A DNA stretch of 64,000 bases from Octopus sinensis (GCF_006345805.1 NC_043005.1:4526001-4590000); one strand, 5' to 3'. Positions 3,118-28,920 are shown, numbered from the stretch's first letter. Numbers and translations are program-made. The notes: generated from the sequence alone by a model not told the origin.

Positions 3118-3118
3118 T

Positions 3119-3553: not shown

Positions 3554-3614
<61 letters not shown>

Positions 3615-6109: not shown

Positions 6110-6218
6110 CTATCTTTTCTATCCGTCCACCTTTTAATTTCTCGGGGAAAGTCACTTTGTGACGAATTAATTTTAGCGATAATTCCTTCATAGAAGAAAG
6201 CATGCTTTTGACACCCAT
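6110..6218 (-). CDS. TIMM29: Putative first coding exon of mitochondrial import inner membrane translocase subunit Tim29
   Basis: ATG at 6218 with an in-frame stop upstream; reads MGVKSMLSSMKELSLKLIRHKVTFPEKLKGGRIEKI+G; ends at a perfect AG|GTAAGT donor (phase 1). FPEKLKGGRIEK resembles the recalled invertebrate Tim29 motif PE(R/K)(F/L)KG..(I/V)E(R/K). No exon 2 found in the window. Confidence 0.55.
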
Positions 6219-7634
6219 GACTACATGTGTTTGGGTCTGTTAGCTTTGCATATAAATATGTGCATGTGAGTGCATGTGTTGGGGTGACCTTTCGCTTGGG
6301 GGACGGGTAACTGCGGTGTTGAAAGCGAAGGAAATGAAGTTGAGAATCTACAAAAAGAAATCCGGATATTCCGAGAAAACGAAACGAATAAGCATGGAAG
6401 ACAGACGTGTAACTCCATTCCTAAGTTTTTATTCTGTAAACTTTTACTTTTCGAAAGAAGTTATTAATTTATAATTATTTGTAATTACTTTTACAAGAGA
6501 AACGCAAATACATTGGTGTCGTTTTACGGGAGAAATGGAAAGATATATGATATTGTTTTTTGTTTTTTTTTTATTCTGGGCACAAGACAGTGATGGGATT
6601 AACCGATACCATTGATTCAAGTCAATTGACTGGTATTTTATTTTATCGGTTGCTAAAGGATGAAAAGTAAAGTTGGCTCCAACTGGATTTGCACCCAGAA
6701 CGTAAAGAGCCAGAAAACAGAAGTTTATAATAGAAACATTTAATAACTTAGCTTTAAGTATTTACTTATTCGTTTCGTTTACTCATGACTCCAGAACTTG
6801 ATAAATTTCTTTTCTATAAACTTTTAAATAATATTTTTACTTTTCGAAATGAGTTTTCAGTTTGTAATTACTATTGCACGAAAAATTACAAAAGAAATTT
6901 CAAGTAATGTCTTTGAATTACCTATTTATATGCATATATTTATTCGTTTCACTTTTTCCGGATAACCAATACTATTTCTGTACATACCCATATTCGTTAT
7001 TAATTCTGTTGAAAGCGGATATAACCCATCCTTGGGTTATATTTTTACTCAGAAGGATTTGTGTTATGGATGATTTGATGATTTGAAATCGAAAATTATA
7101 ATAGTTATGTGATGTGATATAACTGCTCAGCAGCTCATAGACGTGAAGGGTTTAAAGATTCAAGAGAAACATTAATTTCACCGGGCATAGAGGCCCTGCG
7201 AAAGTCATGTGGTCTGTCCTTTCTCCAGACCCGGCAAAATATAAAATGAACTAATATCGACTGAGGATCGAACAGGTTCACAAATTAAATTCGCTGTGTC
7301 TGTTCATTTTGCTCTCAGCCTGCTAGAAACAGCAGTCAAATCTTTGTATCAGACGCTCTCGCCTTAAAATAGGAAGGACAGACTGGTTTATGTGATCCTG
7401 GTTGCACCTCGCTTGGATTTTAAAAATATATATGTAAAATGATTAGGGTCCCAACGACTTTGATCTTTAAAAGCCTGCTCAACAAGGGCTGACAACAAAA
7501 CTCGTGTGATGATCATGCATTTCTCGGGAGCATTGACTGTAAAATGAAACTATACAGAGGAAAATACACTTCACAAGCTCTTTTAATACATTATAACTAC
7601 TATAAAATGTTGGTGGGAAAAAAAAAATATGAGC

Positions 7635-7706
7635 CTCCCCGGCGGGGAATCGAACCCCGGTCTCCCGCGTGACAGGCGGGGATACTTACCACTATACTAC
7701 CGAGGA
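7635..7706 (-). tRNA. tRNA-Asp(GTC): tRNA-Asp(GTC), solitary copy
   Basis: 72-nt TCCTCGGTAGTATAGTGGTAAGTATCCCCGCCTGTCACGCGGGAGACCGGGGTTCGATTCCCCGCCGGGGAG; intact cloverleaf, A/B boxes, T-run terminator downstream. Confidence 0.97.
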
Positions 7707-8862
7707 CCGGCTGTTAGATTGACTTTCATTTTAGAAAGTCATTCTATTACAACTTTCCCATTTGATATCAATTTAGAAATCCCTTTAAATTCAAACATCT
7801 TCTCTTCTTTCACTACATAAATATTTTACTAAACATTGTTCGTCATCGTTTTCGATAACATACGAAGGTAACGTTCCGATGTTTTAAAGCCAGCCACGCC
7901 CAAACAAGATATCTGCAATCTATAAATGATTATTTGTGCTCTCAAGTTAATAAATTAATCGTTCGACATTCTTAAGTTCAAATCCTTTGGAAGTTGCAAT
8001 TATTCATGTTTCTGAAACAGTAATCTATCGATCCGTCTTGCACGAGGCTAGAGTTATAAAAACCAAGGGCATAACTACAGTTCAGTGCCCCGCAAATTTG
8101 TTTCCTCATACTTTCTGAAAATGTTGTACTTTTTGATGAAATTTTCCTTATATATTTTTTAGAGGGTGTAGACTACAATTATGCAGAGAAAGTGCAGAAA
8201 GAATTTCTAAATTTGCTAGCTTTAGCATTTTTCACATTTTTTCCCCCAGATATCTATGTTTGAAACATCGACATAATGTAATCTACATTCTCAAAATATT
8301 ATTTCTGGAAAATGAATGTCAAAATACATATTTAAAGATAGTTATGAGGAGAGAAGAATGATCTGAAATAGGAAAGAATGGTCTGAAGAGAGAGGAAGAA
8401 AGAGCTGAAACGTCAAAAAACCTTAACATAACCTTAATCAACACCTTGAGAGACGTATCACTCATTATTTTATTAAATATGCATGAGGAAACAAAGTGAC
8501 GCAGGTGGAGGAATGGACCGATCTGTTGTTATGCCGAAAGACTCTGTAGGTCCCATTTAATTTCTCTTGTATTCTTCATTGTGCTGAGACAATTCCATCC
8601 TTCGGCAGATGACAATAAGGAAATTGAGAATTTTAACAGATGTAAAAGTCTTTTAATAACATCTTTGTGCAAGTTTTAATGAAATGAGGTAAAGAATTTG
8701 CAAAACATTCGATATTTTCTAAGTGTGGTAAAAATGAGCAAAATTTTGTATTTTTGACAAACTTTGAGATTTTATACTTTCAAGAAGCTGTTTTCTTTTC
8801 GTTTTATTTCTTTTCTTAAAGAATAGAGAAACTCGTCCTCAGTCTTTTAGTGCCATTTTAAA

Positions 8863-9107
8863 AATCAACCCTTTTTGTGTGGTTCATAGAAAAATGAGTA
8901 AGGAGTCCACCAACATCTCTACAAGAACTGGAGACTGTTTTAGCTGAAGAATGGATAAAAATTCCTTTGGAAACAATTCAAACTTTGTACGAGTCCATAC
9001 CTCGTAGAATTCAAGCTGTAATTACTGCCGAAGGCGGTCCTCCCCCATATTAAGATAAATTTACTTGAAATTTTAAGGTCTTTCCATTATTTTGTCCAAC
9101 CCTTGTA
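8863..9107 (+). mobile_element. Tc1-like transposon 3' fragment
   Basis: PPTSLQELETVLAEEWIKIPLETIQTLYESIPRRIQAVITAEGGPPPY* followed by TIR-like TTTTGTCCAACCCTTGTA. Confidence 0.85.
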
Positions 9108-9359
9108 CACCTAAAGCAATTTTTTTTCAGGGGCCTTTAAAATACTATCGTGGATCCTCGATTTACTATTTCATTGCGTGGGTCCCCGAAAATATTATGT
9201 GAACCCTTAGGGGCCATATGGATCCCAGTTGAGAACCCCTGATGTAGAGACTGCCACGTTGGGTCAGTTATTTTCAGGGGCTGCAAAAACTTTTATAGAA
9301 GATCAAAGGAAAAAAAAAATTAAGTGATCAATAAAGAAAAAGAATTACAGAATAATAAT

Positions 9360-9744
9360 GGATGGAAGCACTCCGTCGGTTACGACGACGAGGGTTCCCG
9401 TTGATCCGATCAACGGAACAGCCTGCTCATGAAATTAACGTGTAAGTGGCTGAGCACTCCACAGACACGTGTACCCTTAACGTAGTTCTCGGGAATATTC
9501 AGCGTGACACAGAGAGTGACAAGGCCGGCCCTTTGAAATACAGGTACAACAGAAACAGGAAGTTAAAGTGAGAGAAAGTTGTGGTGAAAGAGTACAGCAG
9601 GGATCACCACCATCCCCTGCCGGAGCCTCGTGGAGCTTTAGGTGTTTTCGCTCAATAAACACTCACAACGCCCGGTCTGGGAATCGAAACCGCGATCCTA
9701 CGACCGCGAGTCCGCTGCTCTAACCACTGGGCCATTGCGCCTCC
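9360..9744 (-). mobile_element. Full-length tRNA-derived SINE with 13-bp target-site duplication
   Basis: Minus-strand head GGAGGCGCAATGGCCCAGTGGTTAGAGCAGCGGACTCGCGG...GGTTTCGATTCC (A and B boxes); TSD ACAGAATAATAAT at 9347..9359 and 9745..9757. Confidence 0.9.
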
Positions 9745-9758
9745 ACAGAATAATAATA

Positions 9759-10219
9759 GGCTGTGTGGTAAGGAGCTTGCTTCCCAATCACATGATTCTG
9801 GGTTCAGTCCCTCTGTGTAGAACCTTGGGCAAGTGTCTTCTACCGTAGCCTCAGACCAAGCAAAACCTTGTGAGTGGATTTCGTTGACAGAAACTGAAAG
9901 AAGCTTGTCGTATGTGTGTGTGTGTGTGTGTATACCGTCCAACCCATGCCAGCATAGAAAATGGGTGTTAAATGATGATGATGATGATATATGTGTGTGT
10001 GTGTCTGTGTGCCTATGTTTGTGTGCCCACCCCCGCCTGCTTGACAACTGGTGTTGGTGTGTTTGCATCCTCATAACTTAGCAGTTTGGCAAAAGAGATT
10101 TGACAGAATAAGTACCGGGCTTAAAATAAGTGCTGGAGTCAATTCATTCACCTAAAAATTCAAGGCGGTGCCCCAGCATGGCCGCAGTCTAATGACTGAA
10201 ACAAGTAAAAGATAAAAGA
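9759..10219 (+). mobile_element. tRNA-derived SINE with internal (TG)n (family B here)
   Basis: Head GGCTGTGTGGTAAG...GGGTTCAGTCCC, tail CCCCAGCATGGCCGCAGTC..GAAACAAGTAAAAG; relatives at 24510, 34270, 35930, 39190, 59530, 59714 and 61140. Confidence 0.8.
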
Positions 10220-10347
10220 GGAGAAAAACAACAAAAAAACTTTCCCTACGTCTCTTTCAGTAAATGACGGTTGACAAGAGATGTAAAGTTTTGACTGAAC
10301 AATCTCTAATACGGATTACTTTTTATGGACTTTGACATAGCTGTGTA

Positions 10348-11120
10348 TACAGGGTGGTGGAAAAGTGAGTAGGCATTAAAAATTGATAACAAAATCCTCA
10401 TTCCTTTTACAAATTTATTGAAACAAATGATACATGTTCTTTATTACATGGGAAAATGAAAGTAAATCTTCATATTTCAACGTAAACACCGGTGGCGTCA
10501 ACCAGTTTCCTGAAACGGCCAGGGATGAGGTGAGCAACCTCCTGAAGGATGTCGTCTGGGATAACATTAAGAGCCTCCTGCATCCTTGTCTCCAAGTCCT
10601 CCAGTGTGCAAGGTTTTGTTTTGTACACCTCCTCTTTTGTGTAACCCCACAGGTAGAAATCACACAGAATGAGATCTGGACTTATTAGAGGCCATTCATG
10701 AGGTCCGCGTCGTCTCAATAGGTTTTAGCTCCTGCACGTAATGGGGTTTCCACGGACGAAAATTCAATTTTTTTATGCAACACTGTATGTATTATGTGTC
10801 TTGTTCGTCCACTTTCACGAATTGCTTGACATGATTTTTGCGGTCTGCTATCAAACATTTCCTGCACTGTTGCCTCATTCTCCACTGATCGGGATGGGGT
10901 TGGATGGCCACTTCTTGCATCATTCACAGAGCCCGTGGTCATCAGCTTCGCATGACAACTTTTTATTGTCTCTGGATGTAGTGTTGCACGCTTACCTTTC
11001 CATGCATGCCACCATCTCTTAACCAAAACAATGGAAATCCACACTTCATAGCATGCTGCTATCTTAACTGGCTCCTGAACAGTTTTGAAATTGTTTTCGT
11101 CATAACTTCAGCGATACTAA
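10348..11120 (-). mobile_element. Internally deleted IS630-Tc1-mariner element
   Basis: N-terminal HTH-like piece (..TGSVNDARSGHP..) joined near 10715 to C-terminal WPLISPDLILCDFYLWGYTKEEVY; TIR-like TACAGGGTGG at 10348; right end uncertain. Confidence 0.85.
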
Positions 11121-11384
11121 GAATTCTATAAGCAATATCTTGTAGAACGACCATGCGAAAAGGAGAGGTGATGAATGAATGACTCTTTTAAACGCCACAC
11201 GGTCGCCTTACAATGAAAGCCAAAATATGGATAAATGAGTATGAGTGCCAGAAGGAATAAGGAGGCGACACAACCGCAGAATGTTTAAGAGAAAGGTTTT
11301 ATTTAGATGTTAGCAGAGTGTATGTCCGTGAGGGCGACATAAGTAAATACATATAATAATAATAATAACAACAACAACAACAAT

Positions 11385-11943
11385 AAATGCCCTGATGCAG
11401 TACCAGGCAGTGGCTCTCATGGCTTCTGATCTTAACTGATTGGAAGTGTTATCATGTACATTGTTTTGTCTTGGTATAAAAGATGGGCTACAGCAAATAT
11501 TCTGTTCAATACCACAGATTTGCTTGTCAGTTGTTTGACCATAACCAGTTGAGCATGTCCCTTAGTGGCTGACGATATGTGCATCTCTGATCACGAGCAG
11601 AAGTAGTGGGGAAGCATCATAGCCGTGTGTTGAGAGGAATTCTTTGGGGTTTGAATAATTCACCTCTGGAAACATGGGTGTTTCGTTCAACATCCTTAAA
11701 CAACCCTTATTCAGGGACCTTTTGAGCAAGATGGGCTACTCGACCTGAAGAAAATTCTAACTGGGCCCCACCTGCAAGGTCATGTGCTGTCTATCTTGAT
11801 ATAAGATCATCATGTCGCGCACATAAGGTTGTGATGCATGTGCCTGGTGTACCCTTATCAGACGGGTAGTCATGATGGATATACTGGGCTTTGTATATTT
11901 TACCCCAGTGTCACTTTGATGGCATGCACTGCTCTCTCACTCA
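11385..11943. repeat. Unclassified interspersed repeat flanked by (AAT/AAC)n
   Basis: Higher-GC block bounded by simple repeats on both sides; classification rests on recall only. Confidence 0.4.
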
Positions 11944-13140
11944 ATAATAATAATAATAGACAGGCCGTCATTCATACAATAATGTGTATGTGTGCTAGCA
12001 GTGTATCTGTGTGTTCGCGTCATGCATACAATAAGAACAATAACAGACAGGCCGTCAAGCATACAATAACGTGTATGTGTGTACAAACAAGGGTGTATGC
12101 GTGTGAGATAAAATACAGAGCATAGAAACGAGTCTATAACAGGACACTAGAAGTTCGGACACAAGTTGTAGATAAATACCAGTTCGTAGTAATGAACGCA
12201 ATAGTTGGAGTTCTGGGCAAGAAGTTGAGGTCACAAGGCAGAACCAGTTACTACACGTGTTGTGTAGAGGTAATGGCTTCTATGCTGTGCCGGGTTACTT
12301 GGTACAGGAAATCCTCACAGATTGAGCTAGCTGTTAACCGTGGTGAAATATTCACAAACAGCGTGAAGTTAAACCTAGGCGCAGTTACTGTTGGCGTCGT
12401 TAAGATGAAGGCGACGGTAGTGGAGACAACGTTAAGATTAAAGGCGACGTTAAGAAGAAGGCGACAATGGTAGAGGTCCTGAATACTGCTGGTGTTGGTG
12501 TTGTCGCTGTCTGTCGCTGGGTGCTATGTGGTCAGAGGTTAGTCCTTAGAAGGACTAGAACCAAAGACCCGATAGGGTGAATCGCTGAAGCTTTTATAGA
12601 AAATTAGAGGCTCAAACGGAGCATTTAGAAGACTGTGTCACGGGACCTTGTCAGAAGATTGGTTGGGTCGCACATTGGCGCGAAATAAAGCAAGAGACAA
12701 ACTGCACCAAAACCAACCAATCAGAGTAGTGAACACAACAGGGCCCAAGCAGCCGAAGGTTAACTGTTATCTGCTACGTCCGTATTTGTGTTATATATGT
12801 CAGAAAGAGAGAGAGAGAGAGAGAGAGGGGGGAGTATTTCACTAAGGGTCCGCTACAATCTAATGCTTAGTTACATTCCACCCACCCCTACTAAGGCTGT
12901 GTAGTTAAGAAATTCCTTTTGCAACCACATGGCTTTGGCTTCAGTCCCACTGTGTGGTTCCATGAGTATACTGCTATAGCTCTTGACTATCCAATGCCTT
13001 ATGAGTGAATGTAGTAGATGGAAACCGTGTGGAAGCCTATCAGGTGTGTGTGTTTGTTTGTGTCTCCTTGTCTTGACATCACATGATACTTTTAAATGAT
13101 GTCAATTAGCGACAGAAGCAGTATTCATACGTAGAGCAAA

Positions 13141-13704
13141 TATCTCTCCCCACTTAGCCGTGGCTGTTCTGTTAGAACAAACTATACTGGAGAAGTTACC
13201 ACGAGAGAATATCTAGTGTTGGCTTTTTGGTGCAAAATACACTCTTGTTTATATCACTAGCAGGAAAGTAAATCCTTACTACTTTTAGCACTTGACCTTG
13301 TTTGGTTTCGTCAATGATGGACGCTCAACAGCCAGATGCAGCAGCAATTCCTCTCATCGCCAGCTTTAGATTGACACTGCCAAAACAGTTGTTGGGATCG
13401 TAATTAGCCGGTTAGCTTGTTAAAATCTCTAATACATATATTTTTTAACAAGTTATACGGCTAATTGCAACACCAGCCTTGTTCTGGTACTGTCAATCTG
13501 TATGTTGCTGGTGGAAGGGTGAATTGTCACTGCTTCTAACAGTCGAGTGTCCATCATTGACAAGACCAAACAAGGTTGAGATCTGGTGGTGCTCTCGGCA
13601 CTGGAGATGAATCCCTGCAAAAAAAACTGATATGAGTGTTTCTCTTTTGGCAACTACTACAGCATGGTTTGTTCTAATAGAACATCCACGATTAAGTGGA
13701 GATA
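13141..13704. repeat. Old diverged palindrome (~280-bp arms, ~17-nt loop)
   Basis: Arm motifs match as reverse complements, e.g. CCTTGTTTGGTTTCGTCAATGATGGAC vs CCTTGTTTGGTCTTGTCAATGATGGAC, and CTTGTTAAAA/TTTTAACAAG at the centre. Confidence 0.85.
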
Positions 13705-14219
13705 AATAACACTTGTAAATGAGTGTCACTGTCATACAAGCAGTGTCATTCATTTCCAGTCTTCTGTGAAATCATGTCCGACTTTACTTGAACGCAGATG
13801 AAGGTTGGCAACAGGAAGGTCACCCAGCCACACTCTGTCTCAACGAATTCCATTTATCATCGAAAAGTAGATATTAAAATGATGATGATATTACACGCGT
13901 CTTCGTGTTTATATTTGTGCTCCCAACCACCGCTTAGCAACCGGGGTTGGTTTGTTTATGTCCCAGTAACTTAGCAGTTCGGTAAATAAGGCTCGATGCT
14001 ATAAGTACCAGGATTTAAAAAACACTACGACCGATTTGTTCGACCAACCCTACACACTCATGCTGTTTTCTCTCAGCAAAAGTCTTCACAGGACCTGGAT
14101 AGGAACAAGGCTATAGAAGACATTATTCAACATGCTCTGTGAGAGGAATGGAATTTGAAACCTTCCATCATAATTTCTAAGCCACATAATCAAGGCAGAA
14201 AAAGAAAAAGTACAAATGT

Positions 14220-14291
14220 CTCCCCGGCGGGGAATCGAACCCCGGTCTCCCGCGTGACAGGCGGGGATACTTACCACTATACTACCGAGGA
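14220..14291 (-). tRNA. tRNA-Asp(GTC): tRNA-Asp(GTC), pair 1 left
   Basis: Identical 72-mer; T-runs downstream. Confidence 0.97.
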
Positions 14292-14903
14292 TGACACATT
14301 CAGAGAATTTATACATGTTTATTCGTATGCACGTGTGCGTGTGTATGCCTGAATACTTTTTCGTAGATGAGTCAGTAATAGCAGCCAGATTTTGTTTTAT
14401 TGGAAAGGAACCGCGTGGTAGATGAAGGACTTCTACGATTCGAAGAAACAAGGAACGGGATAGTTACAGGTGAAAACCATTTCGTCATTCTCTCATCAAG
14501 ACAGACATAACCCGCGGCAACACAACTTATTATAAACACTGGCCCATGTGTGTGCTTCTATATTTAGATGTGTATATATATCTTTAATGGGGGTGAGATA
14601 GCCGAATAGTACCGTATATCTATGTCTAGATGTAAAACTGAAATGAAAATATCATTGTAAGAGAATTAATGAAAAAAGAAAAAAAAACACGTGAGAGGAG
14701 AACCAACAGGATTTAAATATCATGTTGTGGAAGATGTATCAGTATTTTATATAATTAATACATTTTGCCTGCTTTTATTGTCATCAAATTAAACAACCGT
14801 AAAAACTTCCCTTATATCAACACAGAAACAGAAACATAGTGACACGCCCCGGCTAATGTCGTCATAAAATGAGTTCCTTAATTCAGGCTTCGCTGCCAGC
14901 TGA

Positions 14904-14975
14904 TCCTCGGTAGTATAGTGGTAAGTATCCCCGCCTGTCACGCGGGAGACCGGGGTTCGATTCCCCGCCGGGGAG
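14904..14975 (+). tRNA. tRNA-Asp(GTC): tRNA-Asp(GTC), pair 1 right
   Basis: Identical 72-mer; followed by GCTCGTTATTTTT terminator. Confidence 0.97.
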
Positions 14976-15219
14976 GCTCGTTATTTTTACTTTTTTGATA
15001 GTAGTTGCGTTTTGGATTCGAAAACTGATTATTTCAACAAGGCCGGTCAATTGGAGATGCCTTTTTCGAATGCCCAGCACTCGCCTCGATTCTCACGTGA
15101 AAGGCGGCCATTCGATTTCCCACTATTTTTTTTTCTACATTGGCTTTGTGAATTCTAGTGCCAGTTATTCGAACCAAGGCCAGCCACGCAATGGTCAAAC
15201 TAAAGCGTTTGACAGCTGG

Positions 15220-15291
15220 TCCTCCGTAGTATAGTTGTAAGTATCCTCGGCTGTCACGCGGGAGACCGGGGCTCGATACCCCACAAGGGAC
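15220..15291 (+). pseudogene. tRNA-Asp pseudogene
   Basis: 10 substitutions versus intact copies, hitting the acceptor stem, D-loop GG, anticodon stem (C31G) and T-arm. Confidence 0.9.
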
Positions 15292-15349
15292 ACTCGTTAC
15301 TTTTTTCGATAGTAAAAGGGTGGGAAAAATTTTTTAAAAGAAACTGTAA

Positions 15350-15447
15350 ACAAACCAGCCCGACAAGGTATCGAAACAGGGTCACACATGTTACAAGCTG
15401 AGGAAGTGCTGAATATTCAAAGCAAGTATTTATCGCTTCTTGGGTAA
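15350..15447 (-). pseudogene. Highly decayed tRNA-like relic
   Basis: Minus strand ends GTTTCGATACCTTGTCGGGCTGG (B-box-like) and sits directly behind the tRNA 5'-flank motif; reverse complement recurs at 22861..22958 and partly at 16460..16490. Confidence 0.5.
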
Positions 15448-15556
15448 GCGGGCAGCAAGACCTAAATTAAAGAACTCATTTTATGAAGGCATTCGTGGTC
15501 CGAATATCCAATATTGTGCCAGATGGGGAACCTACAAAAATTAGAAAAAACTAAGC

Positions 15557-15628
15557 CTCCCCGGCGGGGAATCGAACCCCGGTCTCCCGCGTGACAGGCG
15601 GGGATACTTACCACTATACTACCGAGGA
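15557..15628 (-). tRNA. tRNA-Asp(GTC): tRNA-Asp(GTC), pair 2 left
   Basis: Identical 72-mer. Confidence 0.97.
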
Positions 15629-16259
15629 TGACAATTACTGATTTATTCATACGTATATTTATCTGTATGCACGAGTACGTGTGCGTATGTACGACTGAAT
15701 ATTTCCTCGTAGATGAGTCAGAAATAACAGCCAGATTTTGTTTTATTGGTCAGGAACCGCATGGTAGACGAAGGTCTTCTATATACGCGCACGATTCGAA
15801 GAAACAAGGAACGGGATAGTTACAGGTGAAAACCATTTCGTCATTCTCTCATCAAGACAGACATAACCCGCGGCAACACAACTTATTATAAACACTGGCC
15901 CATGTGTGTGCTTCTATATTTAGATGTGTATATATATCTTTAATGGGGGTGAGATAGCCGAATAGTACCGTATATCTATGTCTAGATGTAAAACTGAAAT
16001 GAAAATATCATTGTAAGAGAATTAATGAAAAAAGAAAAAAAAACACGTGAGAGGAGAACCAACAGGATTTAAATATCATGTTGTGGAAGATGTATCAGTA
16101 TTTTATATAATTAATACATTTTGCCTGCTTTTATTGTCATCAAATTAAACAACCGTAAAAACTTCCCTTATATCAACACAGAAACAGAAACATAGTGACA
16201 CGCCCCGGCTAATGTCGTCATAAAATGAGTTCCTTAATTCAGGCTTCGCTGCCAGCTGA

Positions 16260-16331
16260 TCCTCGGTAGTATAGTGGTAAGTATCCCCGCCTGTCACGCG
16301 GGAGACCGGGGTTCGATTCCCCGCCGGGGAG
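16260..16331 (+). tRNA. tRNA-Asp(GTC): tRNA-Asp(GTC), pair 2 right
   Basis: Identical 72-mer. Confidence 0.97.
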
Positions 16332-18016: not shown

Positions 18017-19607
18017 TATAAAAGGCAGATTTTATCTGCCTCCCTTTGTATCTTATAGAAATCTACAATATAGGATTTCTTCAATTACAATTTACCTAGC
18101 ATTTTTAAGAGTAGAATGCATCGGGTCGTGCCAGGTCCAGTTTTTAAAATTTCAACCCCAATTAAGCAAAATTTTGAGAAAACTCACATTGTGGTGTATG
18201 AGTCAAATGCTTTTCTTAGTGTGGCCTACACCACACGCACACGCACACACACAGTGTGCAACGAATAAAGTGAAAGTAATTCACTTTTTGTAGTGAGTGA
18301 CTCTTTCACTCTGCCACTTCCTCTTTACATGCATAGACACGCAAATATATAAATAAAATTGTAAGCTAACGTGTGTGTGTGTGTGTGTGCGTGTGTGTGA
18401 GTGTGTGGCTGTGTGTGTGTGCGTGTGTGTGTGTGTGTGAGGGTGCGTGTGTGTGTGTGTGCGTTTGCGTGAGTGTGTGACAGGAAAGGTTTTTAGGACG
18501 AATATAAGACCTATATCCAAGTAGCAGAAAGATCGCCCAAAAGTGTATATAGATATTTAAATGTATTTATATATTCATCTATACACAGATGTATGTATAA
18601 TGTGTGTGTATATATTTCCATAGAGGTAACCTTTCACTCCATACAAAGTTTTTTAGGACGAATATAAGATCTAAAGTATATACAAGTAGCAGAAAGATCG
18701 CCCAAAAGTGTATATAGATCTTTAAATGTATTTATATATTCATCTATACACAGATGTATGTATAATGTGTGTGTATATATTTCCATACACGTAACCATTC
18801 ACTCCGCACAAAGTTTTTTAGGACGAAAATAAGATCTAAAGTTATCTCTAAGTAGCACAAAGATCGCCCAAAAAGTGTATATAGATATATAAATGTATTT
18901 ATATATTCATCTATGCACACATGTATGTATAACGTGTGTGTATATATTTCCATAGAGGTAACCATTCACTCCATACAAAGTTTTTTAGGACGAAAATAAG
19001 ATCTAAAGTTATCTCTAAGAAACAGAAAGATATCCCAAAAGTGTATATAGATATTTAAATGTATTTATATATTCATCTATACACACATGTATGTATAATG
19101 TGCGTGTATATATTTCCATAGAGGTAACCATTCAATCCATACAAAGTTTTTTAGGACGAAAATATTTATATATAAAAGAAAGGTTGTGTGTCTGTCTACT
19201 CCGATTTAGATTCCTAACTACTCCCACATTTTGCGATGCAGCTTAACCAAAACCGAGTATCTTATAGTCGTGATTCATATCGAGCCCTTCTGGGTATTAG
19301 CGCGCATCTACGATGAGTCTATGATTTTACAAATAATTTACCATCATTTTTTTTCATTTTAATGCATATTTTTTTAATAAAGGGAAGTAACTCTCAAACT
19401 TCACACCAATATGCGTGCTCATATGCGACGTAATATCACATCAGCAGCATTTCCTCACACCCTCCTTGCACTTGGCGAAGGCAAAATACCAGGTGATGAA
19501 AATGGTAATATTGCCATCGATTCCATTTGTACCATTGTTAAGACGCCTTCTGATCTCAGAGATGCAGTGTTCCCAGATCTACAAGCTAATTATCAGAATA
19601 TGGATTG
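18017..19607 (+). mobile_element. Helitron-derived insert within the RTE LINE
   Basis: TATAAAAG-type starts at ~18017 and ~19170; internal tandem repeats; ends in NMRAHMRRNITSAAFPHTLLALGEGKIP...DLRDAVFPDLQANYQNMD, resembling the Helitron Pif1 helicase NMR..F..LL..G.G..VFP..NY segment. Confidence 0.7.
18485..19164 (+). repeat. ~165-bp minisatellite, 4 units plus a partial
   Basis: AAAGTTTTTTAGGACGAA unit starts at 18485, 18645, 18810, 18977 and 19143. Confidence 0.95.
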
Positions 19608-20929
19608 TCTAAGCACTGTTGGAAAGCACTGTTGCTCGCGTTATCCTGTCCAGGCTACAACTGCTTGCTTCTCGAATTTATGCAGAATCGCAATGTGGTT
19701 TTAGAAGAAGCAGATCAACTATTGACATGATATTCTCCATACGCCAACTTCAGGAGAAGTCCAGAGAGCAGAAAATGCCATTATATATGGCCTTCATTGA
19801 TCTGACAAAGGCCTTTGACTTGGTAAGTAGAAAAGGCCTCTTCACCCGGCTCCAAAAAATTGGCTGTCTACCAAAGCAGCTGAGGATCATCAAATCTTTC
19901 CATGATGATATGCAAGGCACCATACAGCACAATGGTTCAACATCAGCCGCCTTCCAAATAAAAAACGGAGTAAAGCAAGAGTGTGTCCTTCCTCCTACAT
20001 TATTTGGCATTTTCTTCTCGCTGCTGCTGTCACATGCCTTTGAGACATCAGGTGATGGAGTGTTTCTGCAAAGTAGAAGTGACGGGAAACTGTTCAATCT
20101 CTCGCGTCTGCGTACCAACACCAAAATCAGAAGCGTCCTGATCAAGGAGATGCTATTTGCTGATGATGCCGCTCTGGTATCACACACAGAAGAAGTCCTG
20201 CAAAGGCTCATCAACTGTTTTGAGCAAGCATGTAGCGACTTTGGCTTAGTTATCAGCCTCAAGAAGACCAACATCATGGGTCAGGCTACATCGGACATCC
20301 CAAACATACATATTGGAGACCACAGACTACAGGAGGTGGAGAAGTTTACCTATCTTGGCTCTACCATCACCTATAACCTATCCCTTGATGCCGAGCTCAA
20401 TATACGCATTGGCAAGGCAGCTGCTGTGATGGCTAAACTCTCCAAACGGGCATGGGACAACAATAAGCTGACCAAGACCACAAAAATGATTTACCAGGCA
20501 TGTGTACTTAGCACTCTACTGTATGGAAGTGAGACTTGGACGCCATACACACGCCAAGAGCGTCGCCTAAATATCTTTCACCTGCGCAACCTCCGGAAAA
20601 TCCTTCGCATCAAATGGCAGAATCATGTCCCCAACAAAGATGTCCTCAAGCAAGCATGAATACCAAGTATGTTTGCACTCCTCACACAAAGACGTATGAG
20701 ATGGCTTGGACATGTTAGCCGTATGGAAGATGGTAGAATCCCAAAGGACTTACTCTACGGAAAGCTTGCTGGGGGCACTAGGTCTGTGGGAAGACTGTTC
20801 TTACGATACAAGGATGTTTGCAAAAGGAACATGAAGGCCTGCAACATCAATATTACCAACTGGGAAGCAGTTGCCAGCAACCGTGGAGATTGGCGACGTA
20901 CCGTAAAAGAGGGAACACAAAGGAGTGAC

Positions 20930-20960
<31 letters not shown>

Positions 20961-21403
20961 GGGAGAGGGAGAGAGAGAGAGAGAGAGAGAGAGGAGGAAT
21001 GGAAAGACAAGAAAAGACGTCAACAAGAAAGTATGCCCTTACAACCAGCCAGGCAAAGTCTTCGCTACATTTGCGGTACCTGCCAGAGGGAGTGTTTGTC
21101 CAGAATAGGACTACACAGCCACAGCAGGTGATGTATTAGGACATGAAATGTAAAAGCCGGACTAGATTATTTTATGCGCAACTCCATTGTCCCCCGAGAC
21201 AAAAAAGGATATCAACAACTACGGATGACCAGCGGACAGAGAGACCTAAATTAAGGAACTCAATTTATGAAGGCCCTTGTGCCTATTCGAATGATGGCTA
21301 TTCAAGAGTCATGTATAGCTTCCTGCGTGACTCCGTACAGGCGTGGTCCGAATATCCAATACAGTTCCTGATGGGGAACCAACAAAAATTAGAAAAACCA
21401 AGC

Positions 21404-21475
21404 CTCCCCGGCGGGGAATCGAACCCCGGTCTCCCGCGTGACAGGCGGGGATACTTACCACTATACTACCGAGGA
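21404..21475 (-). tRNA. tRNA-Asp(GTC): tRNA-Asp(GTC), pair 3 left
   Basis: Identical 72-mer. Confidence 0.97.
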
Positions 21476-22096: not shown

Positions 22097-22168
22097 TCCT
22101 CGGTAGTATAGTGGTAAGTATCCCCGCCTGTCACGCGGGAGACCGGGGTTCGATTCCCCGCCGGGGAG
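22097..22168 (+). tRNA. tRNA-Asp(GTC): tRNA-Asp(GTC), pair 3 right
   Basis: Identical 72-mer. Confidence 0.97.
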
Positions 22169-23112: not shown

Positions 23113-23184
23113 CTCCCCGGCGGGGAATCGAACCCCGGTCTCCCGCGTGACAGGCGGGGATACTTACCACTATACTACCGAGGA
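23113..23184 (-). tRNA. tRNA-Asp(GTC): tRNA-Asp(GTC), pair 4 left
   Basis: Identical 72-mer. Confidence 0.97.
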
Positions 23185-23999: not shown

Positions 24000-24071
24000 T
24001 CCTCGGTAGTATAGTGGTAAGTATCCCCGCCTGTCACGCGGGAGACCGGGGTTCGATTCCCCGCCGGGGAG
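24000..24071 (+). tRNA. tRNA-Asp(GTC): tRNA-Asp(GTC), pair 4 right
   Basis: Identical 72-mer; CTTTTTCTTTTT downstream. Confidence 0.97.
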
Positions 24072-24619: not shown

Positions 24620-24650
<31 letters not shown>

Positions 24651-24818: not shown

Positions 24819-25945
24819 GTGAACACACTACCAAAATGCCCGTTAGTATTGCAAAGTAATTTAATTTATAGTAAAATTTGTAGATAATAATTGACGTAGC
24901 CCACACAATTTTTTTCCTTTTCCTGATTTTAGGGAATTCTTTGGAATTCTCTTCTGGACATTGAAGATTGCGGGGGAAATGTCATTAAAACATAAATCTA
25001 TTAATTCAAAATATTGAATTGCCAATTCTTCATTCGTCCTTGTAGCAGAGCTACATATTACATGGTAATCTGTGAGTCGACCTGCAGAGCAGACGAATAT
25101 ATCGATGAGGCATATCTAGCCTCACTTTGATACACTAAGCCTTGCTTTGGTTCAGTAGCCTCATTCTCAGACACTAGCCTTGTTCTGTGCTACACATGAG
25201 AAACTCCCAGTTCCTGCCAGGCTTCGGTCGAAGACACATGTCTTCTCTGCAGCTCCACAAGCAATCTCCCATGTACAACTCACATGTCTATTCACCTCAG
25301 CACAAGATATCTGGTTCATAAACGAAGATATTTTGTCACACACACATTCTCAAAACGACTGTTCTCATTATACATAGTGTTAATACAAATATTACATGTT
25401 ACTTCTTATAGAACAAAAGCAAAAATCAAAACTTTCTTTGTATGTAAACACACGTTTTTGTATCATGCTACATGCTTCCACCTCAAAAGGTGAACACAGA
25501 ATAAACAATATATTTATACACAAAAATGCTATGATTGGTCATTCATACTAACTGTTTTCCCATTTAATGACACGCACTTGAACAGCCAACGTCGGCTGCT
25601 ATATCCATATCCAAAACTTTAACCCTAAAACTTTTACCTATATTTTGGGGGTTTTCTTTTTAGAATAGCATTCTCGTATTTTTAAAATGTTATTCATCAT
25701 TATCATCATCATCATTGTCGTTTAACGTCCGTTTTCCATGCTGGCATGGGTTGGACGGTTTGACTGGGGACTGGCAAGCCAGGAGGCTGCACCAAGCTCC
25801 AATCTGATCTGGCAATGTTTCTTCAGCAGGATGCCCTTCCTAATGCCAACCACTCTGAGAGTGTAGTGAGTGCTTTTTACATGCCACCGACATGGGAGCC
25901 AGTCAGGTGCATGTGTGTGTGTGTTTGTGAGTGCCTCAATGAGTG

Positions 25946-26790
25946 TATATAAGTTGCAATGAATAAACTGTCGTCTAAATTACGGAAAAATGAAGATAAC
26001 ACTGACATCTCATTTTAACAGATATATTTACTGAAATTGCATAAAAATATCTTGAAATACTAAAGAGTAAATTTATTCAATAAAACCACCATTAGCTTCA
26101 AACATGGCTTCCAGACGTCTTTGGAATCTCCTGCAACTTATCCTGAAACTTCTTGATTAAGTTGGTGAATGCTGCCATAATCCTTGCCTTCAGTTCATCT
26201 TTGGTGTTACAAGGAGTTTTGTTGGTCTCTTGCTCCACTGTGCCCCACACATAATAATTAAGGGAGTTGCATTGCGGGGAGTTAGGTGGCCAGATGTTAG
26301 GGGTGATGCAGTCACAGAAATTGTCTGACTGCCATAACTGGGTTCTCCTGCTTGTGTGGCATAGTGCAGAGTCCTGTTGCCAGACATAGGGACTTCCAAC
26401 AGCCACCCTCTTGACCCAGGGCAGTACTACTTCCTCCAGGCACTTGATGTAGACCTCCATGTTGTGTCTGAGGCCATGTGAGAAGATGAATGGAGGCATA
26501 ATGTTGCCATCACTAGTGACCACTTCAAACACCTGATGTTGACTGGATGTTTGATTTTTATTACACTTGGTACATGTTCATATTGGAGCTTCCGGCATGA
26601 ATGCCAAGCAGTACAGCATGTCATTTCCAAATTTCTGGCATAGTGAATTGCTTCATGGTGCTGTTTTTCTCACAGACAATGCCCAACTGGCCCTACAATA
26701 CTGTGTAGTTGACAAAATCAAAAACAATCAATACTCATGCATGAAATTAAAAATATAAAATGGCAACAATTTACCCATCGCACCCTCTGT
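25946..26790 (-). mobile_element. Degenerate Tc1/mariner element (maT/DD37D-like transposase C-terminal half)
   Basis: VVTSDGNIMPPFIF...YVWQQDSALCHTS...WPPNSPQCNSLNYYVWG; degenerate TIR-like ends. Confidence 0.88.
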
Positions 26791-27705
26791 GTGCGTGTGT
26801 GTGTATGCATAAATATATAAGTATATATGTGTGTACTTGTGTATACATACTACACACATTCACACATAGTGATCAAGCAAATTTTATAAATCCAGTGAAA
26901 AGTACTCAATATAACAAATATAGAGATAATTCATATATTTTTTTAAAGTAAACAAAACAGTTAGTTCATGTTACTAATAATTTCAAAATCACTCACATGT
27001 AGTGAAATTAACTAAACTCCATCAGATTTGTATCATTTCTATGAGTCATCTGTTTTGGAGACAAAATAAGAATTCCTTATGTTATGAGAATTCAGGGAGA
27101 AAATAAGTCCCAACTTTTATGAAGCCTAGTGAAAACCTTACAAATGCAGGTTCATATTATCCCCTTCAGTTTTTGAAAACTTTATAAATAATATATAAAT
27201 AATATAATAAATAATAATAATATAATTTATAAATAACTGTCTAGTTAGTCCCATAGTAAGATCTGTGACAGAGCAACCTCTTACAATGATGATATGCTTG
27301 AAGTAAGAAGATTCAATGACAAATGTGCTTCTATCCACAGTCCAAGCTCCTAAAATGAAAAGGCCTAATAATACCACATGGTTTGCGGCTTTCACCTGAA
27401 ATGTTAAGTCCAACATACATACAGATTTCCTAAGGTTAGGAAGCCACCATTAGCCATAGATATAGTAAATTATTGAATTGGTATAACTTTAAGATTGTTT
27501 TCTCTGTTGCAACCCAACTCATGCATGGAAACCAGTAGTTCATATAGGAACAACACTATATAACAACTAAATGGATCCTTGAACACAGACACTGTAGTAT
27601 AAGTAATATAATTAAAATCCATAAATATTACCTTCATGTGATATATTGGTATGGCAGATGGACTGTTCAAAAAATGATTTTCCAACTATATTTATTTATT
27701 TACAG

Positions 27706-27933
27706 AATATTGAGAAATGGAATATAAAATTTGAAAATTACATTTGGTCTTTCAGAGACAAAGGTATGGACTCAACACTGGCTAGAGGGTTGTTAAAAAG
27801 TGTAGACCTTATATAAAATGGTAGTAAAAGATGTGGCCTCTGCACAGCTGGGAAAAGACTAATCCTGGATAACTTCCTTACACCAGAAATATATTTGAAC
27901 ATCAAGCAGAAAGTATCTTGCAAGTTTGCTTAA
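27706..27933 (+). mobile_element. Penelope-like GIY-YIG endonuclease C-terminal relic
   Basis: ENYIWSFRDKGMD...*NGSKRCGLCTAGKRLI...LN resembles the YIW.LK..G...NGSKRC.LC..EK..I motif; in-frame stop. Confidence 0.7.
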
Positions 27934-28484
27934 CAAAACAGAACATGGCTACTCTAAATGAAACAATGAAACATCCAGATTTGAGCACAATATCTGAATG
28001 TATTCACTACTTTCCTTCCTTTTGGTTTTTCATTTTTTCTTTGGTTTCTTAAGAGGAGAAGGAGCAGCCAATACTATCAACCCAAGTTCTAGATTGGTAC
28101 TTTATTTTATCAACCTCGGAGGGATGAAAGGCAAAGTTAGCCCCACTGGGATTTGAACTCAGAATCTAAAGAGCCAGAACAAATATCAATGGACAATTTA
28201 GCTGCTTCACCATCTTTGCTTATTGCATCTTGTTATAAAAGCAACTGCTCAGAGTTTATAAAAGAGAAGTTAACTCTGTTGTGTGTGTGTTGTATATTTA
28301 AAAAAAATTATTCCATGTTAAATATTCTCCCCAGAATCGTACGCCTTTTAAATCGTTTTATACAACTGATTTCACGTCTGTATTTACACTTACTACCAAT
28401 TAAATTATATTTTAGTTTCTTTTTCCACTTTTTTTTAGAAGTATGTGTGTGTGTATAACTATGTATATATATACACACACACAC

Positions 28485-28536
<52 letters not shown>

Positions 28537-28872
28537 CAACAACAACATGTACGTATGTATATGCGATTATAACTGCATGCATGTACATATGTATGTATAT
28601 GTACGTATGTATGTACGTACATGCATACACATATGTGTGTGTGAGTGTATGTGTGTATGTATACGTATGTTACTTTACTTTTTCTAGCTATTTCGTTCAT
28701 ACTCTAAAATATTTTACAATACCTTATCTATTTCACGTTCATTTTATTTCATTTCCCAGTCAAATATTTAAGCGACACCATCAAAATAACTCCATAAAAT
28801 ACGTTTCCTAATCAATATTCTTTACTTTTACTACACAACATCCGCCAGCAGACGACACTGCAGACATTCAAA

Positions 28873-28920
28873 ATGGCTGACCATTCAGCTGTAATTGTTG
28901 ATGTGGACGATATTGACAAG
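28873..28920 (+). CDS. YIPF1: YIPF exon 1 ([16 protein letters not shown])
   Basis: CAAAATGG start context, AAG|GTAAAT donor, phase 0 matches exon 2; no homology support for this peptide. Confidence 0.65.

What the first reader, a model, noticed from the sequence alone, without database searches (positions are those of the whole stretch)
6110..28920. Possible deeply conserved head-to-head TIMM29-YIPF pair, pushed 22.6 kb apart by a tRNA-Asp cluster and TEs
Seen: a minus-strand ATG exon (36 aa, perfect AG|GTAAGT phase-1 donor) diverging from the YIPF ATG at 28873, with no other protein-coding gene recognisable between them. Recalled, not verified: Tim29 N-termini carry PE(R/K)xKGxx(I/V)E(R/K), and human TIMM29 (C19orf52) lies directly head-to-head with YIPF2 on 19p13.2. 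Inference: a bilaterian-age microsyntenic divergent pair whose compact shared promoter was split in this lineage and colonised by a Pol III gene array.
Basis: partly seen in the sequence, partly recalled or inferred. Interest (0 to 1): 0.7.

Follow-up and report, generated by a model that had tools for sequence, protein, structure and literature searches.

The report
Octopus Tim29–YIPF divergent pair, spread apart
The short minus-strand exon is the annotated first exon of the octopus mitochondrial import gene Tim29, which sits back-to-back with a YIPF1/2 gene as in vertebrates, other molluscs and a mite, except that in octopus a tRNA-Asp gene array and transposons have widened the usual ~0.3-1.2 kb gap to 22.7 kb.

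Summary

- **Tim29 exon.** Window 6218..6110 (-) is a 109-nt ATG exon ending AG|GTAAGT in phase 1. Its 37 residues match the N-terminus of Octopus sinensis Tim29 (XP_029640872.1) exactly. The window is CM016867.1:4526001-4590000 of GCA_006345805.1.
- **Exon 2.** It lies about 0.68 kb beyond the left edge of the window, after a 6.79-kb intron. The phase-1 intron position matches abalone, mussel, acorn worm, ant and monkey.
- **YIPF gene.** The plus-strand gene starting at 28873 is a complete nine-exon YIPF1/2 orthologue of 308 aa with a Yip1 domain.
- **Synteny.** Head-to-head Yip1|Tim29 neighbours occur in green monkey (405 bp between CDS starts), Arapaima (1,244), Haliotis (306), Mytilus (317) and Varroa (431). 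They were not found within 10 kb in Patella, Saccoglossus, an ant or a copepod.
- **Octopus gap.** It is 22,654 bp and holds nine identical tRNA-Asp(GTC) genes, a LINE and Tc1/mariner debris. O. bimaculoides has six tRNA-Asp genes in the collinear 10 kb.

The gene is already annotated and conserved divergent pairs are a known class, so interest is modest. A formerly shared promoter is inferred, not shown.

The parts
1..6109 (-). Tim29 intron 1, the part inside the window. The whole intron is 6,788 nt and runs about 0.68 kb past the left end. It is rich in TA microsatellites and TE fragments.
   Evidence: L001 1-16218 equals window 16218-1 at 100%. The exon 2 acceptor is at L001 16896-16897. 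A family HMM finds no Tim29 exon in 1-6109.
6110..6218 (-). Tim29 (TIMM29 orthologue) coding exon 1: MGVKSMLSSMKELSLKLIRHKVTFPEKLKGGRIEKI plus G(gt), with a phase-1 donor AG|GTAAGT.
   Evidence: Identical to residues 1-37 of XP_029640872.1. Pfam Tim29 starts at residue 24 of the spliced protein.
6219..7634 (-). Tim29 5' flank and presumed own promoter. It contains a CCGGAT element conserved in O. bimaculoides.
   Evidence: Promoter function is inferred, not shown.
7635..7706 (-). tRNA-Asp(GTC) gene 1
8471..13796 (.). 5.3-kb stretch absent from the collinear O. bimaculoides spacer, so an insertion here or a deletion there. It holds Tc1/mariner-like ORF remnants (10473-11107, minus strand).
   Evidence: Collinearity breaks at L011 7726/7789 against window 13797/8470. 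The ORFs were read. The mariner assignment is by eye, with no Pfam hit.
14220..14291 (-). tRNA-Asp(GTC) gene 2
14904..14975 (+). tRNA-Asp(GTC) gene 3
15210..15305 (+). Degenerate tRNA-Asp-like copy, 84-85% identical to the real genes over 96 nt and not called as a tRNA.
   Evidence: family D6
15557..15628 (-). tRNA-Asp(GTC) gene 4
16260..16331 (+). tRNA-Asp(GTC) gene 5
17152..21136 (+). LINE retrotransposon inserted within the tRNA array. The endonuclease is at 17492-17938 and the reverse transcriptase at 19613-20656. A 165-bp x4 tandem repeat lies at 18512-19174.
   Evidence: Pfam Exo_endo_phos_2 at 3e-4 and RVT_1 at 5e-25. Repeat family D5. Absent from the O. bimaculoides spacer.
21404..21475 (-). 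tRNA-Asp(GTC) gene 6
22097..22168 (+). tRNA-Asp(GTC) gene 7
23113..23184 (-). tRNA-Asp(GTC) gene 8
24000..24071 (+). tRNA-Asp(GTC) gene 9
26101..26577 (-). Tc1/mariner-like transposase remnant (159-aa open segment).
   Evidence: Assigned by eye (…WQQDSALCHTS… DDE-like), with no significant Pfam hit.
28873..28920 (+). YIPF1/2 orthologue exon 1 ([16 protein letters not shown]), phase-0 donor GTAAAT.
   Evidence: Haliotis exon 1 is of the same kind (MASFAIDVEDDTFN|GTAAAG).
46750..46786 (+). YIPF exon 2, 37 nt ([12 protein letters not shown]), restores the reading frame between exons 1 and 3.
   Evidence: It was the only candidate in 28921-50366. Haliotis has a 37-nt exon in the same place (…DGLQFQ).
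50367..50491 (+). YIPF exon 3
52382..52550 (+). YIPF exon 4 (…[22 protein letters not shown]…PDLYG)
54171..54284 (+). YIPF exon 5
55056..55210 (+). YIPF exon 6
56876..56995 (+). YIPF exon 7
60840..60902 (+). YIPF exon 8
63567..63662 (+). YIPF exon 9 with the stop codon. The assembled protein is 308 aa.
   Evidence: Pfam Yip1 PF04893 at 1.8e-18 on the assembled protein.

Best explanation
Window 6218..6110 (-) is coding exon 1 of the Octopus sinensis orthologue of TIMM29/Tim29, a subunit of the mitochondrial TIM22 carrier translocase. The exon encodes a basic N-terminal segment plus the first 14 residues of the Tim29 domain (FPEKLKGGRIEKIG). It is spliced through an ancient phase-1 intron to a single second exon lying just outside the window. 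The gene is transcribed leftwards. 22,654 bp to its right, the single YIPF1/2 orthologue (Yip1-domain Golgi protein) is transcribed rightwards. This 5'-5' arrangement is inherited. The same two genes are divergent neighbours 0.3-1.2 kb apart in vertebrates, gastropod and bivalve molluscs and a mite, so the pair dates at least to the bilaterian ancestor. In the octopus lineage the gap was enlarged, first by a tRNA-Asp(GTC) array that was already present in the common ancestor of O. sinensis and O. bimaculoides. It grew further in O. sinensis through duplication of a 1.36-kb inverted tRNA pair unit, a LINE insertion and a 5.3-kb indel. The nine tRNA genes look like ordinary active Pol III units, with intact A and B boxes and T-run terminators. 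It is inferred, not shown, that each protein gene now runs from its own proximal promoter, and that the ancestral short gap acted as a bidirectional promoter.
For: The exon peptide equals residues 1-37 of XP_029640872.1. The gene is called at exactly this locus, and L001 is 100% identical to the window. Exon 2 encodes residues 37-205 at 100% identity behind a good acceptor. The spliced protein matches Pfam Tim29 at 7.6e-56 over residues 24-191. The junction sequence RIEKIG|NYFHNIYSDY is mirrored by Patella RMEKIGNYFHNIYTDY and Haliotis RIEKIGDYFNMIFQDY. A phase-1 intron sits at the same residue, nine positions before the invariant DY, in Haliotis, Mytilus, Saccoglossus, Monomorium and Chlorocebus. 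The motif occurs once in the window and 0 times in 300 shuffles. The YIPF model is complete with Yip1 at 1.8e-18. Its core exon is 72% identical to the Haliotis neighbour, 61% to the Mytilus one and 52% to primate YIPF2. Head-to-head Yip1|Tim29 was seen in Chlorocebus, Haliotis, Mytilus, Arapaima and Varroa. The O. bimaculoides spacer is collinear and has six tRNA-Asp genes. All nine tRNAs are identical with T-runs, each scoring 60.4 bits in Rfam.
Against: No transcript, CAGE or RNA-seq data could be consulted, so expression and the TSS of exon 1 rest on three gene annotations and on conservation. The pair was not found within 10 kb in four of nine non-octopus lineages sampled (Patella, Saccoglossus, Monomorium, Eurytemora). 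The constraint is therefore not universal. The Varroa neighbour is a weak Yip1 match, about 33% identical to the octopus protein. No non-bilaterian was sampled. The 100%-identical 300-nt repeats in the array could partly reflect assembly collapse or duplication. A shared ancestral promoter was not tested at all.
Confidence: 0.85

Rival explanations
1. The two genes are old neighbours, but nothing functional holds them together. The short gap in other animals contains two independent, closely spaced promoters, and the linkage has persisted by chance, or because breaks in a 300-bp gap are rare. Under this view the octopus expansion is neutral repeat accumulation with no regulatory consequence.
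For: Octopus tolerates a 22.7-kb gap (about 12.6 kb estimated in O. bimaculoides) filled with TEs and Pol III genes. The pair has been lost in four of nine other lineages, once through an apparent retrocopy in Patella. No shared sequence motif beyond a weak CCGGA element was found in the gaps.
Against: Orientation and adjacency are kept across lineages separated since the bilaterian ancestor in five lineages plus octopus. Such 5'-5' pairs are the class that Irimia et al. 2012 (PMC3514665) found enriched, co-expressed and short-spaced. Even after a 50- to 70-fold expansion, no other protein gene was recognised in the gap.
Confidence: 0.3
2. Exon 1 as annotated is a gene-prediction artefact or a minor alternative first exon. 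In that case the real octopus Tim29 starts elsewhere, so the true distance to YIPF differs.
For: The exon alone gives no Pfam or PDB hit, and it is only the third-best weak hit (E=1.3) to a full-length family HMM.
Against: The residues encoded on either side of the junction, the motif, and the intron position and phase are conserved from molluscs to primates. Three separate annotations (O. sinensis, O. vulgaris, O. bimaculoides) give the same N-terminus. The exon is 35/37 identical at the protein level between the two octopus species.
Confidence: 0.04
3. The adjacency in octopus, or in protostomes and deuterostomes generally, arose independently and is not inherited.
For: The distribution is patchy: absent in Patella, Saccoglossus, ant and copepod.
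Against: The same two single-copy families lie in the same 5'-5' orientation in six sampled lineages. Three molluscan classes share it. One loss (Patella) has an obvious cause, an intronless relocated copy.
Confidence: 0.03
4. The 22.7-kb gap hides another functional unit, such as a lncRNA, a small ORF gene or a regulatory block, besides the tRNAs. The pair would then no longer be truly adjacent.
For: Only Pfam, Rfam and ORF reading were applied, and 16219-28872 was not covered by the fetched annotation. Blocks at 24.2-26.2 kb are 82-92% conserved with O. bimaculoides.
Against: That level of identity is similar to the rest of the collinear region, including intron sequence at 85-88%. All sizeable ORFs are TE-like or give no family match. 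Rfam finds only tRNAs.
Confidence: 0.1

Closest known systems
Human/vertebrate YIPF2-TIMM29 (C19orf52) divergent pair at 19p13.2, in the order CARM1-YIPF2-TIMM29-SMARCA4
   Same: The same two gene families lie in the same 5'-5' orientation, and Tim29 has the same phase-1 intron. This was shown here in green monkey (405 bp between CDS starts) and Arapaima (1,244 bp), both with CARM1 next door. The human genes share one 19p13.2 GWAS interval (PMC9520490).
   Different: The octopus gap is 18 to 56 times longer than these and carries nine Pol III genes and TEs. The octopus partner is the single pre-duplication YIPF1/2 gene, not YIPF2 specifically. No neighbour beyond YIPF was examined in the window.
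Conserved ancestral microsyntenic pairs (CAMPs) in 5'-5' orientation, e.g. HSPD1-HSPE1 (Irimia et al. 2012, PMC3514665)
   Same: These are unrelated genes kept adjacent and divergent across protostomes and deuterostomes, usually with very short intergenic distance.
   Different: Here the short-distance hallmark is broken in one lineage while adjacency and orientation persist. Whether this pair is in the published CAMP list could not be checked, because the supplement is not held. It is not named in the main text.
Haliotis cracherodii and Mytilus trossulus Yip1|Tim29 loci
   Same: These are the closest relatives with data. They have the same exon 1 motif (FPEKLKGGRIEKIG in Haliotis), the same intron and the same divergent neighbour. 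Haliotis also has the same small 37-nt YIPF exon 2.
   Different: Their gaps are 306 and 317 bp, with no tRNA gene inside.
Tandem or inverted nuclear tRNA gene arrays, and tDNA chromatin insulators (Raab et al. 2012 and Van Bortle & Corces 2012, cited from my own knowledge)
   Same: A cluster of identical tRNA genes with A and B boxes and T-run terminators sits between two Pol II genes.
   Different: Insulator activity is not tested here. The array may be a passive passenger.

Membership tests
Tim29 (Pfam PF10171; TIMM29/C19orf52) | Significant match of the protein to the Tim29 domain model | tested here: met
   The spliced protein P0314 scores 188.7 bits, E=7.6e-56, over residues 24-191 of 205. 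The exon alone is too short and gives no hit.
Tim29 (Pfam PF10171; TIMM29/C19orf52) | Exon peptide identical to, or continuous with, a Tim29 protein encoded at this locus | tested here: met
   Residues 1-37 are identical to XP_029640872.1. The locus is 100% identical to the window, and exon 2 lies 6.79 kb downstream.
Tim29 (Pfam PF10171; TIMM29/C19orf52) | N-terminal PE[RK]x[RK]Gxx[ILVM][ED][RK] motif followed about 10 residues later by the invariant DY | tested here: met
   The motif is present in named Tim29 of Ixodes, Limulus, Centruroides, Tubulanus, Haliotis and Patella. DY is invariant in alignments A1 and A2.
Tim29 (Pfam PF10171; TIMM29/C19orf52) | Conserved phase-1 intron nine residues before DY | tested here: met
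   Both octopus species, Haliotis, Mytilus, Saccoglossus, Monomorium and Chlorocebus have it.
Tim29 (Pfam PF10171; TIMM29/C19orf52) | Subunit of the TIM22 complex in the inner mitochondrial membrane | not testable with these tools
   Human Tim29 is chain C of the TIM22 complex structure 7cgp. The octopus protein's location is inferred by orthology.
YIPF1/YIPF2 (Yip1 domain family, PF04893) | Yip1 domain match | tested here: met
   The 308-aa assembled protein scores 67.4 bits, E=1.8e-18, over residues 105-274.
YIPF1/YIPF2 (Yip1 domain family, PF04893) | Orthology to YIPF1/2, as opposed to other Yip1 paralogues | tested here: inconclusive
   Exon-by-exon tblastn matches to primate YIPF2 are 43-49% identical across the length, including FW.F.YYQ.FFDVD…PDLYG. 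No phylogeny against YIPF3-7 or YIF1 was made.
Conserved ancestral microsyntenic pair, 5'-5' type | Adjacency in both deuterostomes and protostomes | tested here: met
   Monkey and fish, plus abalone, mussel, octopus and mite.
Conserved ancestral microsyntenic pair, 5'-5' type | Conserved divergent orientation | tested here: met
   In every positive locus Yip1 is on the minus strand upstream of Tim29 on the plus strand. The same holds in the window.
Conserved ancestral microsyntenic pair, 5'-5' type | Co-expression of the two genes | not testable with these tools
   No expression data were available.
Bidirectional-promoter gene pair (under 1 kb between starts) | Under 1 kb between the two transcription starts | tested here: not met
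   The octopus ATGs are 22,654 bp apart. The criterion is met by CDS-start distance in monkey, Haliotis, Mytilus and Varroa at 306-431 bp, although TSSs are unknown.
Functional nuclear tRNA-Asp(GTC) gene | Cloverleaf with GTC anticodon, intact A box (TAGTATAGTGG) and B box (GGTTCGATTCC), and a downstream T-run terminator | tested here: met
   ARAGORN and Rfam (60.4 bits against a 29-bit cutoff) find all nine. The nine sequences are identical, with T-runs within about 12 nt.
Functional nuclear tRNA-Asp(GTC) gene | Pol III transcription or presence in the mature tRNA pool | not testable with these tools
   No tRNA-seq or Pol III occupancy data were available.

The most novel reading that the evidence does not exclude
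The octopus locus may be a natural uncoupling experiment. An ancient bidirectional-promoter pair, one mitochondrial import subunit and one Golgi Yip1 protein, was split. The intervening array of active tRNA-Asp genes would now act as a tDNA/TFIIIC insulator, letting the two genes be regulated independently while they stay neighbours. That would make the array functional and not passive filler, and would show that the force keeping this pair together is not a shared core promoter.
Probability: 0.1. Interest if true: 0.5.

Novelty: new member of a known kind. Interest (0 to 1): 0.3.

Why it matters
The gene itself is ordinary and already annotated. The modest value lies in the comparison. TIMM29 and YIPF1/2 have no obvious functional link, yet they form a divergent pair that has stayed together since at least the bilaterian ancestor. 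Octopus shows that adjacency and orientation can survive a 50- to 70-fold expansion of the gap by Pol III genes and transposons. This gives a concrete locus for testing whether such pairs are held by a shared promoter, by shared distal regulation or by inertia, and whether tRNA arrays insulate neighbouring Pol II genes in a cephalopod. It also supplies a clean example for cephalopod genome studies, where much ancestral microsynteny has been lost: a retained pair with a datable stepwise expansion (O. bimaculoides against O. sinensis).

Tried and rejected
- **Peptide alone against Pfam and PDB:** the 37-aa peptide gave no hits because it is too short.
- **Word-index search with the padded 41-aa peptide:** it returned 'no homologue'. 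This was a false negative, because the identical O. sinensis protein is in that database. It should not be read as absence.
- **Exon 2 inside the window:** nothing Tim29-like appears in the three-frame translation of 1-6107. A 117-sequence invertebrate Tim29 HMM against all six frames found no other exon, and gave exon 1 only E=1.3, ranked third. Exon 2 lies outside the window.
- **Direct splice of YIPF exon 1 to the exon at 50367:** rejected because the frames do not fit (phase 0 donor, phase 1 acceptor). A 37-nt intermediate exon resolves it.
- **Pomacea Tim29 locus:** no exact gene is on record.
- **Literature:** no paper was found that describes the TIMM29-YIPF pair as conserved synteny or as a bidirectional pair. 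The supplement of Irimia et al. 2012 is not held. Nothing was found on nuclear tRNA arrays in cephalopods.
- **Promoter motif scan of the gaps:** only a weak, possibly shared CCGGA(A/T) element near Tim29 turned up, with no convincing common architecture.
- **Bacterial-type promoter and terminator scan:** not used, because it does not apply to an animal genome.

Full report
**The observation**

On the minus strand an ATG at 6218 opens a 109-nt reading frame that ends ...AAG ATA G|GTAAGT at 6110. That is 36 codons plus one base, a phase-1 donor with the full AG|GTAAGT consensus. On the plus strand an ATG at 28873 opens a 48-nt exon ending AAG|GTAAAT. The two ATGs are separated by 22,654 bases.

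ARAGORN finds nine tRNA-Asp(GTC) genes between 7635 and 24071. Rfam at gathering threshold finds the same nine and nothing else in the whole window.

**What the minus-strand exon is**

The peptide alone is too short for Pfam or PDB. A word-index search with a padded version wrongly returned nothing. I therefore approached it from the family side.

- My recollection of human TIMM29 was checked against chain C of the TIM22 complex structure 7cgp and was identical.
- That sequence retrieved vertebrate Tim29 proteins. A profile of ten of them (A1) was run against 1.84 billion representatives and gave 400 family members.
- Many invertebrate members carry the recalled motif about 10 residues before the invariant DY. 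Examples are LPEKYKGGRLEKIGIYW in Ixodes Tim29 and LPEKLKGGRVEK in Limulus.
- A second profile of motif-bearing invertebrate sequences (A2) retrieved molluscan Tim29 proteins, including Octopus sinensis XP_029640872.1. Its first 37 residues are identical to the window's exon.

The genomic locus of that protein (L001, GCA_006345805.1, CM016867.1) is 100% identical to window 16218..1 over 16,218 bases. The window is therefore CM016867.1:4526001-4590000, and the exon is the annotated Tim29 exon 1.

Residues 37-205 are encoded by one further exon behind a strong acceptor (ttttttttctctctccag|GT), 6,788 nt downstream. That places it about 0.68-1.19 kb beyond the left end of the window. This explains why neither reading the translation nor a family HMM found a second exon inside the window.

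The spliced protein matches Pfam Tim29 at 7.6e-56 from residue 24 onwards. FPEKLKGGRIEKIG is thus the start of the domain.

**Independent support for the splice**

- The junction RIEKIG|NYFHNIYSDY is matched by the uninterrupted Patella sequence RMEKIGNYFHNIYTDY and by Haliotis RIEKIGDYFNMIFQDY.
- The Haliotis gene has its intron at the same base of the same codon, AAG ATT G|GTAAAA.
- A phase-1 intron nine residues before DY is also present in Mytilus, Saccoglossus, Monomorium and green monkey.
- O. vulgaris and O. bimaculoides annotations give the same N-terminus, 37/37 and 35/37 identical.
- The motif occurs once in the six-frame translation of the window and never in 300 block shuffles.

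No transcript data were available, so expression is supported only by annotation and conservation.

**The plus-strand gene**

Homology to the primate YIPF2 cDNA and to the Haliotis locus, together with splice sites, gives nine exons:

| Exon | Coordinates |
|---|---|
| 1 | 28873-28920 |
| 2 | 46750-46786 |
| 3 | 50367-50491 |
| 4 | 52382-52550 |
| 5 | 54171-54284 |
| 6 | 55056-55210 |
| 7 | 56876-56995 |
| 8 | 60840-60902 |
| 9 | 63567-63662 |

These encode 308 residues with a Yip1 domain at 1.8e-18.

The gap is bridged by a 37-nt exon ([12 protein letters not shown]), the only candidate in 21 kb. Haliotis has the same structure: MASFAIDVEDDTFN|GTAAAG, then a 37-nt exon ending ...DGLQFQ. So 28873 is the YIPF start codon.

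**The synteny claim**

I fetched 10 kb either side of Tim29 in other animals.

| Species | Neighbour upstream of Tim29 | Gap between CDS starts |
|---|---|---|
| Chlorocebus sabaeus | Yip1, opposite strand, CARM1 beyond | 405 bp |
| Arapaima gigas | Yip1, opposite strand, CARM1 beyond | 1,244 bp |
| Haliotis cracherodii | Yip1, opposite strand | 306 bp |
| Mytilus trossulus | Yip1, opposite strand | 317 bp |
| Varroa jacobsoni | Yip1 (weak), opposite strand | 431 bp |
| Patella vulgata | no Yip1 within 10 kb; Tim29 intronless | – |
| Saccoglossus kowalevskii | different divergent neighbour | – |
| Monomorium pharaonis | SNX9-like neighbour | – |
| Eurytemora | no Yip1 neighbour | – |

- tblastn with octopus YIPF exons confirms that the positive neighbours are of the YIPF1/2 kind. 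Identity of the core exon is 72% in Haliotis, 61% in Mytilus and about 50% in vertebrates. Varroa is about 33% but keeps the YY..FF.V..QV…PDLYG pattern.
- The Patella gene looks like a relocated retrocopy.
- The human genes lie in one 19p13.2 interval with CARM1 and SMARCA4 (PMC9520490).

The same orientation in vertebrates, three molluscan classes and a chelicerate is most simply explained by inheritance from the bilaterian ancestor, followed by several losses.

**What fills the octopus gap**

- The nine tRNA-Asp genes are identical 72-mers with canonical A and B boxes. Each is followed within about 12 nt by a T-run.
- Most sit in inverted pairs. Three pairs belong to a 1.36-kb unit whose copies include 300-nt stretches that are 100% identical. 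This points to very recent duplication, gene conversion or an assembly effect.
- Two degenerate tRNA-like copies are also present.
- A LINE interrupts the array. Its endonuclease is at 17492-17938 and its reverse transcriptase at 19613-20656, Pfam 5e-25.
- Tc1/mariner-like ORF remnants lie at about 10.5-11.1 kb and 26.1-26.6 kb. These were assigned by eye, with no Pfam support.
- No other ORF submitted gave a credible family match. The fetched gene calls show no gene besides Tim29 in 6219-16218.

In O. bimaculoides the 10 kb upstream of Tim29 is collinear with window 6219-26224 and carries six tRNA-Asp genes, five of them identical to the O. sinensis sequence. It lacks the LINE, one 1.36-kb unit and the 5.3-kb block 8471-13796. 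The array therefore predates the split of these two species. The gap has since roughly doubled in O. sinensis; about 12.6 kb in O. bimaculoides is an extrapolation.

**How it most likely works**

*Shown:*
- Two conventional protein-coding genes are transcribed away from each other.
- Tim29 exon 1 supplies a basic N-terminal stretch and the first residues of the Tim29 domain.
- Nine structurally intact Pol III genes and several dead or dying transposons lie between the two genes.

*Inferred:*
- Each protein gene now uses its own proximal promoter.
- The short ancestral gap worked as a bidirectional promoter, as is typical for 5'-5' conserved pairs under 1 kb apart (Irimia et al. 2012, PMC3514665).
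- The tRNA array entered once and then grew by unit duplication and TE insertion.

A CCGGA(A/T) element lies roughly 50-130 bp upstream of the Tim29 ATG in both octopus species, Mytilus, monkey and Arapaima. This hints that a Tim29-proximal element stayed with Tim29, but it is weak evidence.

The main rival for the mechanism is that nothing functional links the two genes and the expansion is neutral. The tolerance of a 22.7-kb gap and the four losses fit that view. The retention of order and orientation across phyla fits constraint. Expression data would decide.

**Comparison with what is known, and novelty**

The gene is annotated in RefSeq, and the vertebrate YIPF2-TIMM29 layout is visible in any genome browser. 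Conserved divergent pairs are a described class.

I found no paper naming this pair as ancient microsynteny. I could not check the CAMP supplementary list.

The particular point is a retained ancient 5'-5' pair whose gap was expanded 50- to 70-fold by a tRNA array and TEs, with two octopus species showing successive stages. This is a new instance within a known kind, of modest interest.

**Verdict**

Novelty is 'new member of a known kind' and interest is 0.3.

Noticed in passing
L004 10001-10579 (Patella vulgata OW026352.2): Patella Tim29 is encoded by a single uninterrupted ORF, with no Yip1 gene within 10 kb. Every other sampled species has the conserved phase-1 intron. It looks like a retrocopy that replaced or relocated the gene and broke the synteny.
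   Followed up: partly
L003 484-2555 (Logan contig SRR24631121_13988): One 3-kb contig from a sequencing run carries the uninterrupted YIPF2 CDS and the uninterrupted TIMM29 CDS on opposite strands, 335 bp apart. This would be expected if the 5' ends of the two mRNAs overlap or abut and the assembler joined them. It hints at a truly shared promoter region in primates.
   Followed up: no
window 14435-14734, 15791-16090, 21628-21927: Three 300-nt stretches within the tRNA-Asp array are 100% identical, and they lie within 1.36-kb repeat units. This means very recent duplication or gene conversion, or else an assembly artefact.
   Followed up: partly
window 6638-6700, 22415-22749, 24326-24409, 28102-28164: A short dispersed repeat (…ATCGACCCCGAAAGGATGAAAGGCAAAGTCG…GAATTTGAACTCAGAAC) recurs on both sides of the tRNA array and near both gene starts. 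It is probably a SINE-type element and was not classified.
   Followed up: no
window 18512-19174: A 165-bp unit is repeated four times in tandem (83-95% identity) between the endonuclease and reverse-transcriptase parts of the LINE.
   Followed up: no
window 6330-6350; L011 ~9860; L006 ~9910; L002 ~9900; L008 ~9950: A CCGGA(A/T) (ETS-like) element lies roughly 50-130 bp upstream of the Tim29 ATG in both octopus species, Mytilus, green monkey and Arapaima. It could be a conserved Tim29-proximal promoter element or chance.
   Followed up: partly
The word-indexed protein search reported no homologue for a 41-aa query whose 37 core residues are identical to a protein in that same database. Negative results from that tool with very short queries are unreliable.
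   Followed up: yes
window 28921-46749: The first YIPF intron is 17.8 kb and carries a reverse-transcriptase ORF on the minus strand (37414-38430) and other TE-like ORFs. The whole 308-aa gene spans 34.8 kb.
   Followed up: partly
L007 203-9109 (Saccoglossus GL012263.1): In the acorn worm, Tim29 is head-to-head (280 bp) with a different gene encoding 505 aa, with no Pfam hit on record. The divergent layout is kept but the partner is replaced.
   Followed up: no
L011 22057-24948 (O. bimaculoides): About 7 kb downstream of Tim29 on the opposite strand, a gene call with an 11,201-residue product begins. It has no Pfam entry on record and was not examined.
   Followed up: no
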